Source of the DNA: Vitrella brassicaformis CCMP3155
Lineage: Eukaryota > Protista > Chromerida
Length of the DNA: 64,000 bases
NCBI GenBank assembly: GCA_001179505.1
Contig: CDMY01000499.1
Coordinates: 1-64,000, forward strand
Reading direction: 5' to 3'
The notes under the pieces were generated by a model that saw only the letters and a program-made list of their open reading frames with translations, had not been told where the DNA came from and searched no databases. Each line of letters begins with the position of its first letter. The first letter of the stretch is position 1. The position numbers and the translations under genes are program-made. Of the stretch, positions 1 through 5,859 are shown piece after piece.

Positions 1-244
1 GGAAAGCATTCTGAGGAGACACGATCTTATCAGCCATCACCGAAGTGAGATCTGTGTTGATCACCCTTCATGATGTCATACATGGACAGAAACAACTTTG
101 ACTGACTGGCCAGTCCATCGGTCTTATTAAAGTAAAAGCACTCTTACTCTGGGACTTACCGCCCAGCAGATCCTCTATTCAGCTAACTACAGGAAAGGTC
201 CTCACCGGCCTTTTCGCACACCCCTGAATGCTGCCGCCAATGTC

Positions 245-1455
245 ATGGGCGACGCAGCCCAAGGAGCCGCACCGTATGTCGAGTTCCTTCCCCCGCTTGA
301 AGACCCTCCCGCCGAGGAGACGGCTGACCTTCCTGTCACCAAGAAGGAACTGTGGGACTTCCGCCGCCAGATGCGGGACGACACGTCCAAAGTCATCCAT
401 CATTGCAATGACTTGGTTGCATCACGCGAGCAAGAGGTCGCCGCCTTCGCCCACGCCTTGCGGGACCTCCAGACACGTTTCGAAGAGTTGGAGATGTCGA
501 TTGAGGGCCGCCGCGTCAGCGCGTACCTCAAAGCGAGAGAGTCCCTCGTGATCCGCCGTCACCTCTCCCGCATTTGCCCCAAGGACCCAAACAAGGACAT
601 CGACTTCTCCTCGCAAGAGGTGCACCGGATCAACTGGGCTGAGGCGAAGAAGATCGACAGCACTGCACTGGAGACGTCGATTCACAACGGCTGGAACGAC
701 CTCAGCGCGTCCGCAGACCCCCAAGACAAGCAGACGGCTCTCAACCTGCACCGTCTCTTACAAGAGATCAACCACGACAAGTGCCGTCATCAGGGGGTCC
801 ACACGGGGAAGGAGAGCATCTTGGCGTTTCTACAGCACGACGAGCGAACAGCCGCCGCCCCTCCACAAATCTCCCGCCCCTACCAGCTGCACATGCTGGA
901 ATACAAGGACAAGAGCGGCGTGAAGTTGGCAGACACAGTAGCGGGATTGGAGAAAGCCCTCAAACAAGACCGGTACGAGACACACACACACTCTCTTTCG
1001 TGGGCTGTTCTCTCTGTGTCTCCCGTTACTCAACCCGTTCGGGCCTCAACTGTTGGGCTGTTCGCCTTCTCGGGCCTTCGTGCCCTTCTCATCCTCAGCG
1101 AGCTTGGCTCGCTTCTCTTTTTTGTTTATGTCACTGTTTGCTCTTCTTCTGAGTTCTCCCGTCAGTGTCGCCGGTGGCGGTCAAACGCTCCATCACCTCG
1201 ACTCCAAGTCCGTCTCCCGCACTCAAGGCCGCCAAAAAGTACGACGGTCCTTGTCTCAACTGCAAAGTCGGTGGCGTTGAGGCGATGCACGACTTCAACT
1301 ACTGCCGAGACGTGCTCAAAAACCCCTGCCGCATCGAGTGCCTGGCATGCAAGAAAACTGGACGACCCGCGCAGCTGCACTGGATGCATCCTGATCACTG
1401 CAATTCGGTGCGTGTTTCCTACAACCTCCCTCCCCTCTCACACCTCCCTCCGTAG
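245..1455 (+). CDS. Gag-like ORF1: coiled-coil N-terminal part (245-972) and two CCHC-like zinc motifs in another frame (1165-1455)
   Basis: First ORF of the element with a heptad-like segment. After 972 the DNA becomes pyrimidine/microsatellite-rich. Frame 1165-1455 encodes CLNC-x8-H-x4-C and CLAC-x9-H-x6-C. How the two parts join is unresolved. Confidence 0.7.
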
Positions 1456-1957
1456 TCTGTCTCTCGCTTGATTCCATCATGAGACTCTTCTTGAGGGCTC
1501 CTTAAATGCTCTTCCATCCCGTCTCTCCCCTATTAAACAAATCCTGACTCGCCCCACTCTCTCTTCAGTCGCTCGGGGAGGTTCCTCTACTCGCTCACTC
1601 AGGGATGGTTTCCCTTTCTCTACTCAGTCACTCGGGGATGGTTTCCCCTTCAGTCGATGTGGTCGTTCTCGCTCACTGTCTCACCCTTCGATCTCTACCT
1701 CACTTACTTACTTATGTGTTCACTCACCTCTCTCACCTCGCTCGACAACACTCAGCTGCTCAACTGATGTCTCTCGCTCGCTTTGGTTGGTGTGTGATGT
1801 TTGTTTATTGTTTCCTCTCTCTCATTCTCACTTTCTCCTCTTCCTGTTCTCCAGCTCTCTGTCCTTGTGTGTCTCAAGTGTGAGTCCTGTCAGGCGGTTT
1901 GTGTTCACGCCTCACGTTGCCTCACCCCCCTCACCCTCTCCTCTCGCGACGCCTCCC

Positions 1958-4117
1958 ATGGAAGTGTCCTCTGATCAGTCCTCTCTTCCCATCGACGTGT
2001 CTCGTCGTATTCTCACGCTCGAGGATCTGCCCCCGCTGTTCCGCGAAGGCCTCGGCTTCTCGACTGTCACTCTTCCTTCAAACAACCCCTCTCTCCCTTG
2101 GCGCAATGGGCGCCGTCTCTCGGGTTCAACAGCGAGTCAAATGGGTATTCTTCCGGCCGTCTGTCGTGCTTGGGACGAGGGGATCTCTCTTTTGGTTGTT
2201 CGCCAAGTCGAGGCTTTCGAGCGACGAAATTACAAGTCGGTGGACGCGGTTCGTCCTGAAGTTGGGAGGGAACTCGATCGTCTTGCAGAAAAAGGCTGGA
2301 TCGAAGAATGTGCACATCGCCCTCATGTGGTCAGCCCACTGGGAGCCGTCCGCAAAGCAAACGGGAAGATCCGCATCATTATGGACCTGACCATCTCGGG
2401 GGTGAATGCATGTTTATTCGTCCCCCCCATGTCTCTCCCCTCTATCTACGACGCATTACGAATGCTCAAACGAGGCTTCTATCAAGCCAAACTCGACCTT
2501 CGTGACGGTTACTTGCACTTGCCAGTGCGGCCTGACGAATGTGATCTTCTTGGCTTTCGTCATCCTGTCTCTCAGAAGTATTTTCGTTATCGTTTTGCCC
2601 CCTTCTGCGTGTCCACTTTGCCGTGGATTTTCGTTCGTTGCATGTTCTTCTTACAGCGTTGGCTGTTTCAGCGGGGCCTTCGATCGGTCATTGTCTATCT
2701 CGATGACTGGTACACCTGCGGTCCTTCTCTCGCCGATGTCTCGCAAGCAAAGGCCCTCATTCAGACCGCTCTCTCTCGACCCGGTTGGGAAGAGGCCTCA
2801 GACAAAGCCAAAGGGCCAGATCAGCTCGTATCGTTTGTCGGTTTCCTCATTAACACGCTCACGCTAATGCTCTCGATTACAGAGAAAAAAAGGCAGAAAA
2901 TCGTGTCTCTGCTCGACGACATCCTCGAGTGTGCTACCGTCGGCCATGTCAACTTCCAGAAGCTACTCAAACTCATGGGCTCTTGTTGTCATATTGCAGA
3001 CATCGTTCCCTTCAGCCCAGCCCGTCTACGCGCCGCGTGGTCTTTCGCAGCCTTTCATCAGGCGCGTCTCAAGTGGCAGTCGCCCTCCAAAGGATCAGAC
3101 GACACGACCACCGTTCCCCTCCCTCGAGAAGACTCTATCTGGAGAGATCTCCGTTGGTGGCGTCGAAAGTTGTCAACACGGCCCGAGCGGAAGCTACATG
3201 AGGCACCGGATGGCACTCTGTACATCTGGGAACCAAAAGCAGATCCCCTGCGTCTCTTTCCACCTGACCTGCGGTCGGCGGACCCAGTCGTGGCTACCTC
3301 TTCTTCGGAAGTCATTGTCGTTTTTACCGATGCTTCGGACTCCGGCTGGGGTGCGGTTTGGGGTCATCAGTCGTTGCATGGCCGTTGGTTCAAGTCCGCA
3401 CTGCGTCGGTCCCCACCTTCAATCAACTGGCGCGAGTTGATGTCCTTCGTTTTCGCTGCTCAGCGTTGGGCTCAACAATGGTATGGGCGTCGTATCCTTC
3501 TCCGTACAGACAGCACAGCAGTTACGGCATGGATCAACAAGAGACATTCGGCATTCAAGGGCATCATGCGCACTCTTTTCGAGCTCTTCAACCTACTCGG
3601 CAAGTTCCAAGTGGAGCTTCTCGCTCTTCACATCTCGGGTACCGACAACATTGCGGCGGATGCCTTATCTCGTGGCCATAAAGTGGGATCCGACTGTTTG
3701 TTTCGTCTCAACCCACGCTCTCTGCAATCAATCGCTCGCGATTTTCACGTGCGCTTCGCGGCTCACTTTGGTCTTGTCGATCCCAGTTGGGAGAGTCTCA
3801 AGATTCGTCACGTCTCTTTCCGTCCCTCGTGCCCCATCAGCGATATCCCGTCCCCCCTGATTGTCTCTCTCTTTCATCCGCGTGTGGCGAGGGACATGCT
3901 CGACTTCGTTCAGGCTCTTCGTCTTCACACTTCTCAGCGTATCTTCATTCTCACCCCCTTCCCTTTCCCTCCAAACACTCACCAGTTCTTTCTCAAACTC
4001 AAGCCTCGCCGCCAGTGGCGTGCAGGCTCTCGTATTCTCGATATGTGGCTGCCGTGTGTGAATCGATGGACGATCAAACAAGAGTTACCATGGGACCTCT
4101 GGTTGTTTGTTTTTTGA
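1958..4117 (+). CDS. Reverse transcriptase + RNase H (Pol); frame open from 1787, first ATG at 1958
   Basis: RT motifs SPLGAVRK, KIRIIMDL, KLDLRDGYLHLPV, IVYLDD. RNase H motifs VFTDASDSGWG, INWREL, LRTDST, HISGTDNIAADALSR. APFC replaces the canonical LPFG. Confidence 0.95.
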   Translation: MEVSSDQSSLPIDVSRRILTLEDLPPLFREGLGFSTVTLPSNNPSLPWRNGRRLSGSTASQMGILPAVCRAWDEGISLLVVRQVEAFERRNYKSVDAVRPEVGRELDRLAEKGWIEECAHRPHVVSPLGAVRKANGKIRIIMDLTISGVNACLFVPPMSLPSIYDALRMLKRGFYQAKLDLRDGYLHLPVRPDECDLLGFRHPVSQKYFRYRFAPFCVSTLPWIFVRCMFFLQRWLFQRGLRSVIVYLDDWYTCGPSLADVSQAKALIQTALSRPGWEEASDKAKGPDQLVSFVGFLINTLTLMLSITEKKRQKIVSLLDDILECATVGHVNFQKLLKLMGSCCHIADIVPFSPARLRAAWSFAAFHQARLKWQSPSKGSDDTTTVPLPREDSIWRDLRWWRRKLSTRPERKLHEAPDGTLYIWEPKADPLRLFPPDLRSADPVVATSSSEVIVVFTDASDSGWGAVWGHQSLHGRWFKSALRRSPPSINWRELMSFVFAAQRWAQQWYGRRILLRTDSTAVTAWINKRHSAFKGIMRTLFELFNLLGKFQVELLALHISGTDNIAADALSRGHKVGSDCLFRLNPRSLQSIARDFHVRFAAHFGLVDPSWESLKIRHVSFRPSCPISDIPSPLIVSLFHPRVARDMLDFVQALRLHTSQRIFILTPFPFPPNTHQFFLKLKPRRQWRAGSRILDMWLPCVNRWTIKQELPWDLWLFVF

Positions 4118-5190
4118 TGTCTCTTTGCCTCAGCACGTGTCCCACTTGTGGTGGCTCGGGGGTGATGCGCGTTGCCTCTCATTATCAAGCTTTCACGTTC
4201 GAAATCGCGTGCCCGTGCTCTGTTCTCTCAGTGGTTCCTCCGTCGACCTCCCTCCCCTCTATCTCGTCCCTCACAAATCAAATCCGCAGCATCTTCTCTT
4301 CGGCTTACGCCGAATCGACCCTCAACAAATACAGCTCGTCCATCAAACATGTCCCCGATGTCCTCCTCCCCCTCGACTCTCCCGCTAAAGTCCTGGTCGC
4401 CTTCACCAACCTCAAGATGTCTCTTCCAGCGAACAAGACTTTGAGTTGGTCTCGTGTCTCTGGCATCATGTCGGCTGTCAGCTGTTTTCACAGAGTCAGA
4501 AACCTCCCCCCTCCGCCATTCAACGAGCCACTCGTCAAGCTCTTGCTCACGGGCCTTCGCAAACAATGCGACAATACATCCCATCACAGTTTGCCGGTCC
4601 CAGCGAAGGTCTTCACCGAGTTGCTTCGTTATTGGACGTCTAAGAGGACGTATGACGGCCTGCGGAATGCGGCTATTGCCTGTCTGCAGTTTTTTGCAAT
4701 GCGTCGGTCTCGGGAGGTGTTGAGTCTTCAGCGCAATCATCTGGTGCGAGACAGCGACGGCTACAAGATTGTGGTCGACAGGCAGAAGAACGACCCATAT
4801 GGCAAGGGCCAAGTCGTTCCCCTCCCGCACTCGTCTCCTCTTTGTCCTCGCGTCACTTTTCTTCTCGATCAATTCATGCTACTCGCACCACAGTCCACTA
4901 ATGCCCCCCTTTTCCAGTCAACCATGGGTAGTCGCTGGTCCGGCAACACACTGTCGTATGATGCGTGGCGTGCTGCATTGAAACGCGCCGTCCTCGTCAT
5001 CGATCCTTCCGTCAAAGCCACTTCGCACTCTCTCAGGAAAGGCGGGGCTCAATGGGCTATGGATAACGGCGTCCCAGATGATATGATTTGTTACATTGGG
5101 GGATGGGCTCACTCTGCCGCCGTGTGGCGGTTATATGCGCAACGCTCTGTCACAGCGATTCGTGACATGCTTACAAAACTCAATTTCTGA
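4117..5190 (+). CDS. Tyrosine recombinase (YR)
   Basis: Catalytic residues in order: RRSRE (R), RQKND (K), HSLR (H, R), GGW (W), RLY (Y). ATG 4117 overlaps the pol stop (TGATG). Confidence 0.95.
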   Translation: MSLCLSTCPTCGGSGVMRVASHYQAFTFEIACPCSVLSVVPPSTSLPSISSLTNQIRSIFSSAYAESTLNKYSSSIKHVPDVLLPLDSPAKVLVAFTNLKMSLPANKTLSWSRVSGIMSAVSCFHRVRNLPPPPFNEPLVKLLLTGLRKQCDNTSHHSLPVPAKVFTELLRYWTSKRTYDGLRNAAIACLQFFAMRRSREVLSLQRNHLVRDSDGYKIVVDRQKNDPYGKGQVVPLPHSSPLCPRVTFLLDQFMLLAPQSTNAPLFQSTMGSRWSGNTLSYDAWRAALKRAVLVIDPSVKATSHSLRKGGAQWAMDNGVPDDMICYIGGWAHSAAVWRLYAQRSVTAIRDMLTKLNF

Positions 5191-5403: not shown

Positions 5404-5503
5404 GTTGGCGGGTTCGCCGATACAGGGCGTCGTTTGACACACCCGGCGACACGGCAACCGTACGTTGTGAGTGTGGAAGCTGCGAGGAGGAAGCCGGGGC
5501 GAA
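5404..5503 (+). repeat. Split direct repeat B1 of the YR element
   Basis: 100 bp identical to 5760-5859 (gttggcgggttcgccg...gccggggcgaa). Confidence 0.97.
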
Positions 5504-5580
5504 GCGGACTGCGGAGGACTGTCAAGTCCGCAGCAGGAAGTTTCGCCCGGCGACCGAGCAGCGTCGTCGTTGAGTCGTGT

Positions 5581-5638
5581 AACGTATCTGCACTGATTGA
5601 TCGGTGTGAAACGTATCTGCACTGATTGATCGGTGCGA
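5581..5638 (+). repeat. 29-bp tandem duplication between B1 and B2
   Basis: aacgtatctgcactgattgatcggtg(t/c)ga twice, one mismatch. Confidence 0.95.
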
Positions 5639-5759
5639 GGACACAGACAGAGTCGTCTGGTGTCCGTCCTTTCTTTCGCGTCCCTCCCTCCCGCCCACTC
5701 TTTTTTCAGATCACGAAGATCCGTCAGCGCGCCCCCCTGAGTTTTACACTCAGGTTCGT

Positions 5760-5859
5760 GTTGGCGGGTTCGCCGATACAGGGCGTCGTTTGACACACCC
5801 GGCGACACGGCAACCGTACGTTGTGAGTGTGGAAGCTGCGAGGAGGAAGCCGGGGCGAA
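5760..5859 (+). repeat. Split direct repeat B2; probable 3' end of the element
   Basis: Identical to 5404-5503; followed by AT-richer host-like sequence. Confidence 0.97.

What the first reader, a model, noticed from the sequence alone, without database searches (positions are those of the whole stretch)
973..1893. YR retrotransposon may make Gag-Pol by splicing
Gag coding character stops at CG|GTACGA (973), a donor like the host's gtacga/gtacgc donors. The stretch to 1893 is pyrimidine- and microsatellite-rich like host introns and ends in ...gtgtgagtcctgtcag|G. Both sites are phase 2, so joining 972 to 1894 gives KQD-R-RFVFTPH...MEVSS, an in-frame Gag-RT-RNaseH fusion. This would explain why the pol frame is open upstream of its first ATG (1958). 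The same donor joined to AG 1208 would give Gag + zinc motifs. Alternative 3' splice-site choice could set the Gag:Gag-Pol ratio. Splice-controlled expression is known for copia and foamy viruses; I do not know it as a described DIRS/Ngaro feature. The sites and phases are seen in the sequence; their use is inference.
Basis: partly seen in the sequence, partly recalled or inferred. Interest (0 to 1): 0.8.

Follow-up and report, generated by a model that had tools for sequence, protein, structure and literature searches.

The report
Possible spliced Gag-Pol in algal retrotransposon
A jumping gene of the alga Vitrella brassicaformis has a very strong host-type splice start right where its capsid (gag) coding ends, and joining it to the best splice end ahead of the copying-enzyme (pol) gene would fuse the two in frame; no RNA data could be obtained to show this happens.

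Summary
GT 973 is the best donor in the whole 5.9 kb element, in the top 0.3% of the window's GTs under a model built from 43 host introns. The published Vitrella gene model P0001 also uses it, but joins it to AG 1165, not 1893. AG 1893 is the best acceptor between gag and pol. Both sites are phase 2, so 972^1894 is in frame, which chance gives one time in three.

A sister element on contig C1057 is annotated (P0011) as gag plus zinc knuckles spliced in frame to pol, so spliced Gag-Pol looks like a family trait.

Three points weaken the reading:
- A 921-base intron is far longer than the sampled host introns (53-143 bases).
- This intron would skip a conserved zinc-knuckle exon (1166-1407) that is one base out of frame at both of its junctions.

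The pol frame being open upstream of its ATG is not informative (P about 0.4).

The scan has already noted the same idea on other DNA of this genome (s1-233274, s1-233297). My verdict is plausible but unproven, and a new variant of splice-controlled retroelement expression if true.

The parts
1..244 (+). Part of the 5' leader. The rest, with the A1 terminal repeat, lies at the end of contig C845.
   Evidence: Window 1-128 matches the last 128 bases of C845 at 98.4%. 116 bases upstream of that overlap on C845, a 177-base stretch matches window 5501-5681 at 96.7%.
245..972 (+). gag exon 1 (242 codons plus 2 bases). It is an orphan N-terminal Gag domain.
   Evidence: ORF. The codon signal is strong up to about 960. 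It is identical to residues 1-242 of the published protein P0001. No relatives were found among 1.84 billion representative proteins.
973..1165 (+). Proximal intron (193 bases): GTACGA followed by (CA)5, a T/G-rich tail, and CAG.
   Evidence: This intron is removed in the published model P0001. Donor 9.8 bits, acceptor 1.9 bits. A-poor composition and no coding signal.
1166..1407 (+). Zinc-knuckle exon (242 bases). It encodes the conserved Gag C-terminal CxNC..H..C / C..C..H..C motifs in the frame of ORF 1165-1455. It is one base out of frame with the 972^1166 junction and with the 1407^1894 junction.
   Evidence: ORF. Homologous to the gag zinc knuckles of three sister families. Positive codon score in frame 1 only. 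Phases read.
1408..1893 (+). Second intron-like spacer (486 bases): a GTGCGT start and a TG-rich ...tgtcag end. It contains a 33-base tandem repeat at 1585-1651.
   Evidence: No coding signal in any frame and stops in all frames. A-poor composition like 973-1165. Donor 3.6 bits, acceptor 6.8 bits. Repeats.
973..1893 (+). Its removal joins gag exon 1 to pol in frame and skips the zinc-knuckle exon.
   Evidence: It pairs the best donor with the best acceptor of the region, both phase 2. Its use in RNA was not tested.
1894..4117 (+). pol ORF (reverse transcriptase and RNase H). The first ATG is at 1958 and conservation with relatives starts near 2040.
   Evidence: Pfam RT_RNaseH 8e-06 and RVT_1 1.3e-04. 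Alignment with relatives. The codon signal starts near 1950.
4117..5190 (+). Tyrosine recombinase ORF. Its ATG overlaps the pol stop (TGATG at 4115-4119).
   Evidence: Pfam Phage_integrase 3.8e-08, above the cut-off. Sequence.
5404..5859 (+). 3' terminal repeat block: B1 (5404-5503), A2 (about 5501-5681) and B2 (5760-5859). B1 and B2 are 100% identical.
   Evidence: the repeat finder. A2 matches the A1 copy on C845.

Best explanation
This is a DIRS-order (tyrosine-recombinase) retrotransposon of Vitrella brassicaformis that carries host-type spliceosomal introns. The donor at 973 is real. It has two competing acceptors.

- The nearby acceptor at 1165 brings in the 242-base zinc-knuckle exon and gives a Gag-only message.
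- The distant, stronger acceptor at 1893 skips that exon and joins gag to pol in frame, giving a Gag-Pol fusion.

Because the skipped exon is not a multiple of three, including it shuts pol out and skipping it lets pol in. The choice of acceptor would therefore set the Gag to Gag-Pol ratio. The unspliced RNA would be the copy that is reverse-transcribed, which is how the introns persist.

Shown here: the sites, their phases and their strength; use of donor 973 in the published gene model; and spliced Gag-Pol in the published model of a sister element. Inferred: that 972^1894 is actually made, and that it is what delivers Pol.
For: - Donor 973 scores 9.8 bits. It is the best of all GTs in the element and in the top 0.3% of the window. 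It sits exactly where the gag codon signal ends.
- The published model P0001 splices at 973. That annotation used Augustus with RNA-seq intron hints (PMC4501334).
- Acceptor 1893 is the best acceptor between gag and pol, with the host's TG-rich tail (TG fraction 0.70 against a host mean of 0.72).
- Donor and acceptor are both phase 2.
- It is the only in-frame route to pol that uses good sites. GT 1452 scores -4.8, AG 1978 scores -3.4 and AG 1208 scores -16.9.
- Sister element C1057: the published protein P0011 equals gag plus zinc knuckles, then a 340-base intron (G|GTACGT...CAG|GC, phase 1 on both sides), then the pol N-terminus.
- Sister pair C33/C863: a 182/183-base GTAAGA...CAG spacer is in frame between gag and pol. 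The two copies differ by a 1-base indel inside the spacer, which suits an intron and not a fixed translational frameshift.
- Gag and pol do not overlap, and all three frames have stops in between, so ribosomal frameshifting or readthrough cannot link them.
Against:
- The published model uses 1165, not 1893.
- 921 bases is far beyond the 53-143 bases of the 42 reliably sized host introns I sampled.
- The fusion would lack the zinc knuckles, whereas both sister families keep them in the fusion.
- 1894-1957 has no codon signal in the pol frame (-6.4 over 21 codons). The signal begins at ATG 1958.
- In-frame pairing has a 1 in 3 chance.
- In this copy the zinc knuckles are one base out of frame with 972^1166, so the 'Gag plus zinc' arm of the switch does not work as assembled.
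- An earlier scan note on the C33-type element reports that the only transcript seen kept the spacer (s1-233274).
Confidence: 0.42

Rival explanations
1. Pol is made on its own from ATG 1958, not as a Gag fusion. This could be by reinitiation or leaky scanning on a spliced message, or from a subgenomic message that joins a leader donor to acceptor 1893, as foamy viruses do. Under this view the in-frame relation of 973 and 1893 is a coincidence.
For: - The pol-frame codon signal starts at about 1950 and is negative over 1894-1957.
- Each relative also has an ATG soon after its acceptor: 10 bases after it in C1057 and about 60 bases after it in C33.
- The element already uses an overlapping stop/start (TGATG, 4115-4119) between pol and the recombinase.
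- Moderate donors exist in the leader: GT 198 at 6.3 bits, and a GT 20 bases upstream of the overlap, on C845 (L068 1774), at 6.0 bits.
Against: - Three families (this element, C1057, C33/C863) all have an in-frame GT..AG path from gag to pol.
- The published C1057 model is a fusion.
- Donor 973 is much stronger than any leader donor.
- 21 low-complexity Pro/Ser codons are too few for the codon score to decide.
Confidence: 0.25
2. The intended design is a three-exon gene: gag exon 1, intron 973-1165, the zinc-knuckle exon, intron 1408-1893, then pol. This matches the sister families, where the fusion keeps the zinc knuckles. On this view the copy, or its assembly, is frame-broken, so it makes neither Gag-zinc nor Gag-zinc-Pol.
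For: - Composition and codon signal change exactly at 1165/1166 and 1407/1408.
- Both spacers have host-like polar ends.
- The sister families keep the zinc knuckles upstream of the gag-pol intron.
- All Cys and His residues of the zinc knuckles are intact.
- The contig breaks inside the element, and a 98.4% overlapping contig end exists, so assembly errors are plausible.
Against: - It needs two separate one-base problems, one at each end of the exon.
- Pol and the recombinase are fully open, and the 100-base terminal repeats are identical, which points to a young and otherwise intact copy.
- GT 1408 is only a middling donor at 3.6 bits.
Confidence: 0.2
3. Only the short intron 973-1165 is ever removed, as in the published model. 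The rest of the spacer is decayed or filler DNA, the copy is dead, and the 1893 acceptor is a chance match.
For: - Eight AGs in the element score 6 bits or more by chance.
- The element is effectively single-copy, with only 160-232 base fragments of its family elsewhere.
- The database search found no annotated pol protein matching this locus.
Against: - Pol (740 codons) and the recombinase (357 codons) are intact, and the B repeats are identical.
- The sister family shows the spliced design.
Confidence: 0.1

Closest known systems
Drosophila copia and plant Ty1/Copia elements (EVD, BARE): alternative splicing sets the Gag to Pol ratio (PMC5580714, PMC3735527)
   Same: A retroelement uses the host spliceosome, rather than ribosomal frameshifting, to make more structural protein than enzyme from one transcript.
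   Different: In those elements the unspliced RNA encodes Gag-Pol and splicing removes pol sequence to give a Gag-only message. Here the unspliced RNA cannot give Pol, and splicing would create the Gag-Pol frame. Those are LTR elements with an integrase, whereas this one is a tyrosine-recombinase element.
Foamy viruses: Pol is translated from its own spliced mRNA (PMC7828637)
   Same: Splicing is needed to express Pol.
   Different: Foamy virus Pol is not a Gag fusion. Here the good donor lies at the end of gag exon 1 and is in frame with pol. The foamy-like alternative is kept as a rival explanation.
Penelope-like elements that retain spliceosomal introns (PMC3846280; also my own recollection of Arkhipova et al. 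2003)
   Same: A retroelement keeps an intron through RNA-mediated copying.
   Different: The Penelope intron is not known to link gag and pol frames, and the element class and enzymes differ.
Sister Vitrella YR element on contig C1057 (published protein P0011)
   Same: It has the same gene order and homologous zinc knuckles, pol (39% identity) and recombinase. A GT..AG spacer between gag and pol fuses them in frame when removed.
   Different: In C1057 gag is one exon, the donor sits two codons before the gag stop, the intron is 340 bases, and the fusion keeps the zinc knuckles. Here the in-frame path skips them.
DIRS-1, Ngaro and PAT tyrosine-recombinase retrotransposons (PMC7192593, PMC8547959)
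   Same: Shared gag-like ORF, RT/RNase H and tyrosine recombinase, and an A1...B1-A2-B2 type of terminal repeat.
   Different: The described members have separate or overlapping ORFs. I found no report of natural introns or spliced Gag-Pol in them.

Membership tests
DIRS-order (tyrosine-recombinase) retrotransposon | Reverse transcriptase with RNase H | tested here: met
   RT_RNaseH scores 8e-06, above its cut-off. RVT_1 scores 1.3e-04, below its cut-off. Pol is 34-46% identical to five other YR-element families in the genome.
DIRS-order (tyrosine-recombinase) retrotransposon | A tyrosine recombinase instead of a DDE integrase | tested here: met
   PF00589 scores 33.7 bits against a cut-off of 27.1, over window 4120-5190.
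DIRS-order (tyrosine-recombinase) retrotransposon | Terminal repeats of the split direct type (A1 ... B1 A2 B2) rather than LTRs | tested here: met
   B1 (5404-5503) equals B2 (5760-5859) at 100%. A2 (5501-5681) matches a copy upstream of the leader on the overlapping end of contig C845 at 96.7%. Caveat: A1 lies across a contig junction.
Host-type spliceosomal intron (973-1165 and 973-1893) | GT..AG ends with a host-like donor and a TG-rich, A-poor 3' end | tested here: met
   Donor 9.8 bits. Acceptor 1893 scores 6.8 bits with TG fraction 0.70. Acceptor 1165 scores 1.9 bits with TG fraction 0.63. The host mean TG fraction is 0.72.
Host-type spliceosomal intron (973-1165 and 973-1893) | Length within the host range | tested here: not met
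   The 42 reliably sized host introns are 53-143 bases, with a median near 81. The candidates are 193 and 921 bases. The annotated intron of the sister element is 340 bases.
Host-type spliceosomal intron (973-1165 and 973-1893) | Removal seen in RNA | not testable with these tools
Only the published model P0001 (973-1165) speaks to this, and I cannot tell whether RNA hints backed it.
Copia/EVD-type splice control of Gag versus Pol | Unspliced RNA encodes Gag-Pol, and the spliced RNA encodes Gag only | tested here: not met
   Unspliced, the gag frame runs to a stop at 1469-1471 and never reaches pol, and all three frames have stops before 1787. Splicing would create the fusion rather than remove it.
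Gag-pol linked by programmed ribosomal frameshift or readthrough | Overlapping or abutting gag and pol ORFs with a slippery site or a leaky stop | tested here: not met
   The zinc-knuckle ORF ends at 1455 and the pol frame opens only at 1787. No overlap exists and no convincing slippery heptamer was found. The C33 and C863 copies differ by a 1-base indel in the spacer.

The most novel reading that the evidence does not exclude
A tyrosine-recombinase retrotransposon uses a frame-shifting cassette exon as its Gag/Gag-Pol switch. One strong donor (973) chooses between a near acceptor and a far acceptor. The near acceptor includes the 242-base zinc-knuckle exon and gives nucleocapsid-bearing Gag with pol out of frame. 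The far acceptor skips the exon and gives Gag-Pol. The unspliced RNA serves as the template that keeps the introns. This would be a way of setting Gag to Pol stoichiometry not described for any retroelement class.
Probability: 0.25. Interest if true: 0.75.

Novelty: new variant of a known kind. Interest (0 to 1): 0.55.

Why it matters
How DIRS/Ngaro-type elements make Pol, and in what ratio to Gag, is not known. A splice that creates the Gag-Pol frame would be a third solution alongside ribosomal frameshifting or readthrough and the copia-type 'splice away pol' strategy.

It would also sharpen a paradox. An element that copies itself through RNA can keep introns only if the RNA that is reverse-transcribed escapes splicing. 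That implies some control over export or packaging of unspliced RNA in an alveolate.

There is a practical point too. Gene-finders annotate such elements as ordinary multi-exon genes (P0001, P0011), which affects gene counts and repeat masking in chromerid genomes.

Tried and rejected
- **RNA reads.** I did not resend it.
- **Other genomic copies.** DNA and protein searches of the whole assembly found only this copy, plus 160 and 232 base pol fragments at 88% identity.
- **Transcript-derived proteins.**
  - The word search with gag exon 1 found only P0001, and the word search with pol found only distant relatives.
  - The full library search with gag exon 1 found P0001 plus one weak hit, P0012.
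  - The look-up of encoding contigs had no record.
Rejected as unlikely, because the acceptor AAG scores -16.9 bits.
- **GT 1452** (GTAGTC across the TAG stop), which would give an in-frame zinc-to-pol join. Rejected, at -4.8 bits with C at position -1.
- **1407^1979.** It is in frame, but the acceptor scores -3.4 bits.
- **-1 frameshifting from the unspliced gag frame into the zinc frame.** There is no suitable slippery site after the frame-1 stop at 1150.
- **Structured RNA in the spacer, or pairing between its ends.** No Rfam match at E up to 1, and folding is no better than shuffles, z = +0.87.
- **Gag frame staying open to 1471.** This is only marginal, P = 0.04 with dinucleotide shuffles.
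- No repaired frame was worked out.

Full report
**What is there.** The window starts inside a tyrosine-recombinase (YR) retrotransposon of Vitrella brassicaformis. The organism follows from the source name of protein P0001, which agrees with an earlier scan note.

The parts, in order:
- A leader (1-244).
- gag exon 1 (245-972).
- An A-poor spacer (973-1165).
- A 242-base stretch with coding composition that encodes two zinc knuckles (1166-1407, inside ORF 1165-1455).
- A second A-poor spacer (1408-1893).
- A 740-codon pol frame (1895-4117, first ATG at 1958).
- A 357-codon recombinase ORF whose ATG overlaps the pol stop (TGATG, 4115-4119).
- A 3' block of repeats, in which 5404-5503 and 5760-5859 are 100% identical.

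Pfam finds RT/RNase H in pol and Phage_integrase in the recombinase ORF. The missing 5' repeat sits at the end of contig C845. That contig end overlaps window 1-128 at 98.4% and carries a copy of 5501-5681. This gives the A1...B1-A2-B2 layout of Ngaro/PAT-type elements.

**The observation.** 971-972 are the first two bases of a gag codon and GTACGA starts at 973. The AG is at 1892-1893, and base 1894 is the third base of a pol-frame codon.

To judge the sites, I derived 43 host introns from HSP70 and kinesin genes, anchoring exon ends on Pfam model coordinates. Host donors are loose (GT, then A/G/C, then A/C, then mostly G) but have G at position -1 in 40 of 43 cases. Acceptors are CAG in 37 of 43 cases, after a TG-rich, A-poor tail. 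Reliable lengths are 53-143 bases.

Scores with weight matrices from these introns:
- GT 973 scores 9.8 bits. It is in the top 0.3% of the window's 4046 GTs, above 81% of true donors, and is the best GT in the element. Only one other GT, inside the recombinase gene, reaches 7 bits.
- AG 1893 scores 6.8 bits, at the 97.5th percentile. It is the best acceptor between 1000 and 2100, but one of eight AGs scoring 6 or more in the element.
- AG 1165 scores 1.9 bits, GT 1408 scores 3.6, GT 1452 scores -4.8, AG 1978 scores -3.4 and AG 1208 scores -16.9.

A codon-usage score trained on the element's own conserved coding parts gives the following:
- The gag signal ends near 960-970.
- The zinc frame is positive over about 1170-1320.
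- There is no signal in any frame from 1408 to about 1950.
- The pol signal starts at about 1950.

**Independent support for the donor.** The published Vitrella protein P0001 (280 aa) equals 245-972 joined to 1166-1280. The genome paper's Augustus annotation was trained on Vitrella genes and given RNA-seq intron hints. It also splices at 973, but to AG 1165. That reading runs in a frame one base off the zinc knuckles and stops at 1278.

**The zinc-knuckle exon.** Its motifs align with the C-terminal gag zinc knuckles of three other Vitrella YR families. C, N, C, G, H, C, C and H are invariant columns, and the pairwise E-value to the C1057 gag is 0.001. It is therefore a genuine Gag domain.

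In this copy it cannot be reached in frame through any good site. After 972^1166 the frame is one base off. From the zinc frame, GT 1408 is phase 0 while 1893 needs phase 2. Both junctions are off by the same single base. I describe this and have not worked out any repair.

**Relatives.**
- Across families the design recurs. In the C1057 element gag is one ORF with the zinc knuckles. A GTACGT donor (8.0 bits) lies two codons before the stop and a TG-rich CAG acceptor lies 340 bases on. Both are phase 1. The published protein P0011 is exactly gag, then that intron removed, then the pol N-terminus.
- In the C33/C863 pair a GTAAGA...CAG spacer is in frame between gag and pol. The two copies differ by a 1-base indel within it, 182 against 183 bases.
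- The C929 copy has a strong donor overlapping the gag stop, but is too decayed downstream to read further.

**Most likely mechanism.**
- Donor 973 is used. I consider this well supported.
- The near acceptor 1165 gives a Gag message. The far acceptor 1893 gives, in frame, Gag-Pol without the zinc exon.
- Because the exon is 242 bases, inclusion and skipping lead to different frames. This would make acceptor choice a Gag/Gag-Pol switch.
- This is the only in-frame path to pol through good sites, and it matches the family habit of making Gag-Pol by splicing.

I put this reading at about 0.4, for these reasons:
- No RNA was seen.
- A 921-base intron is very long for this host.
- The sister elements keep the zinc knuckles in the fusion.
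- 1894-1957 shows no coding signal.
- In-frame pairing is a 1 in 3 event.

The rivals are Pol from its own ATG 1958 (0.25), a three-exon design that is frame-broken in this copy or in the assembly (0.2), and a dead copy with a chance acceptor (0.1).

**Comparison with known systems.**
- Splice control of retroelement expression is known for copia and plant Ty1/Copia elements, where splicing yields a Gag-only message (PMC5580714, PMC3735527).
- It is also known for foamy viruses, where Pol comes from its own spliced mRNA (PMC7828637).
- Penelope-like elements keep introns (PMC3846280).
- In full-text searches I found no report of natural introns or spliced Gag-Pol in DIRS/Ngaro elements.
- Here the logic would be the reverse of copia, because splicing creates the fusion.
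- The scan has already raised the same idea on other DNA of this genome. Notes s1-233274 and s1-233297 appear to concern the C33/C863 family. One of them reports that the only transcript seen kept the spacer.

**Limits.**
I did not resend it.
- Spliced models were examined exon by exon by reference.
- The splice matrices rest on only 43 introns from conserved genes.

Noticed in passing
window 4115-4119: The pol stop and the recombinase start overlap as TGATG. This suggests termination-reinitiation coupling between pol and the tyrosine recombinase.
   Followed up: no
window 1-128 and L068 (C845:13761-15681) 1794-1921: The end of contig C845 overlaps the start of this contig at 98.4% and carries the element's 5' repeat (A1; 96.7% to window 5501-5681). 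The two contigs probably abut inside the element, or a second copy exists whose interior is unassembled.
   Followed up: partly
window 1166 and 1407 (the two junctions of the zinc-knuckle exon): Both junctions of the 242-base exon are out of frame by the same single base relative to the conserved zinc-knuckle frame. I have no explanation. Possibilities are assembly error, real damage, or an unusual design.
   Followed up: partly
window 973-1471: The unspliced gag frame stays open for 166 codons past the donor, across the spacer and the zinc exon in the wrong frame. P is about 0.04 with dinucleotide-preserving shuffles, which is marginal.
   Followed up: yes
L021 about 5029-5072 (C1057 element): A roughly 22-base tandem duplication (gcgctatcgttaaaaca repeated) shifts the pol frame of the sister element, so that copy is broken. 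The published protein P0011 ends there.
   Followed up: partly
L022 6201-6441 (-) and L025 2711-2956 (-): The C33 and C863 copies of another YR family are 97% identical across their gag-pol spacer. They differ by a 1-base indel inside it, while GTAAGA and CAG are kept.
   Followed up: yes
window 1585-1651: A 33-base unit is repeated twice (88% match) inside the second spacer. Its function, if any, is unknown.
   Followed up: no
C418:70838-71071 and C40:111936-112095: 232 and 160 base fragments of this element's pol at 88% identity. They are the only other traces of the family in the assembly.
   Followed up: yes
C838:15513-15582 and C359:80000-80069: 70-base pieces 99% identical to window 5617-5686, part of the terminal repeat, occur on two other contigs. 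They could be solo remnants or a shared short repeat.
   Followed up: no
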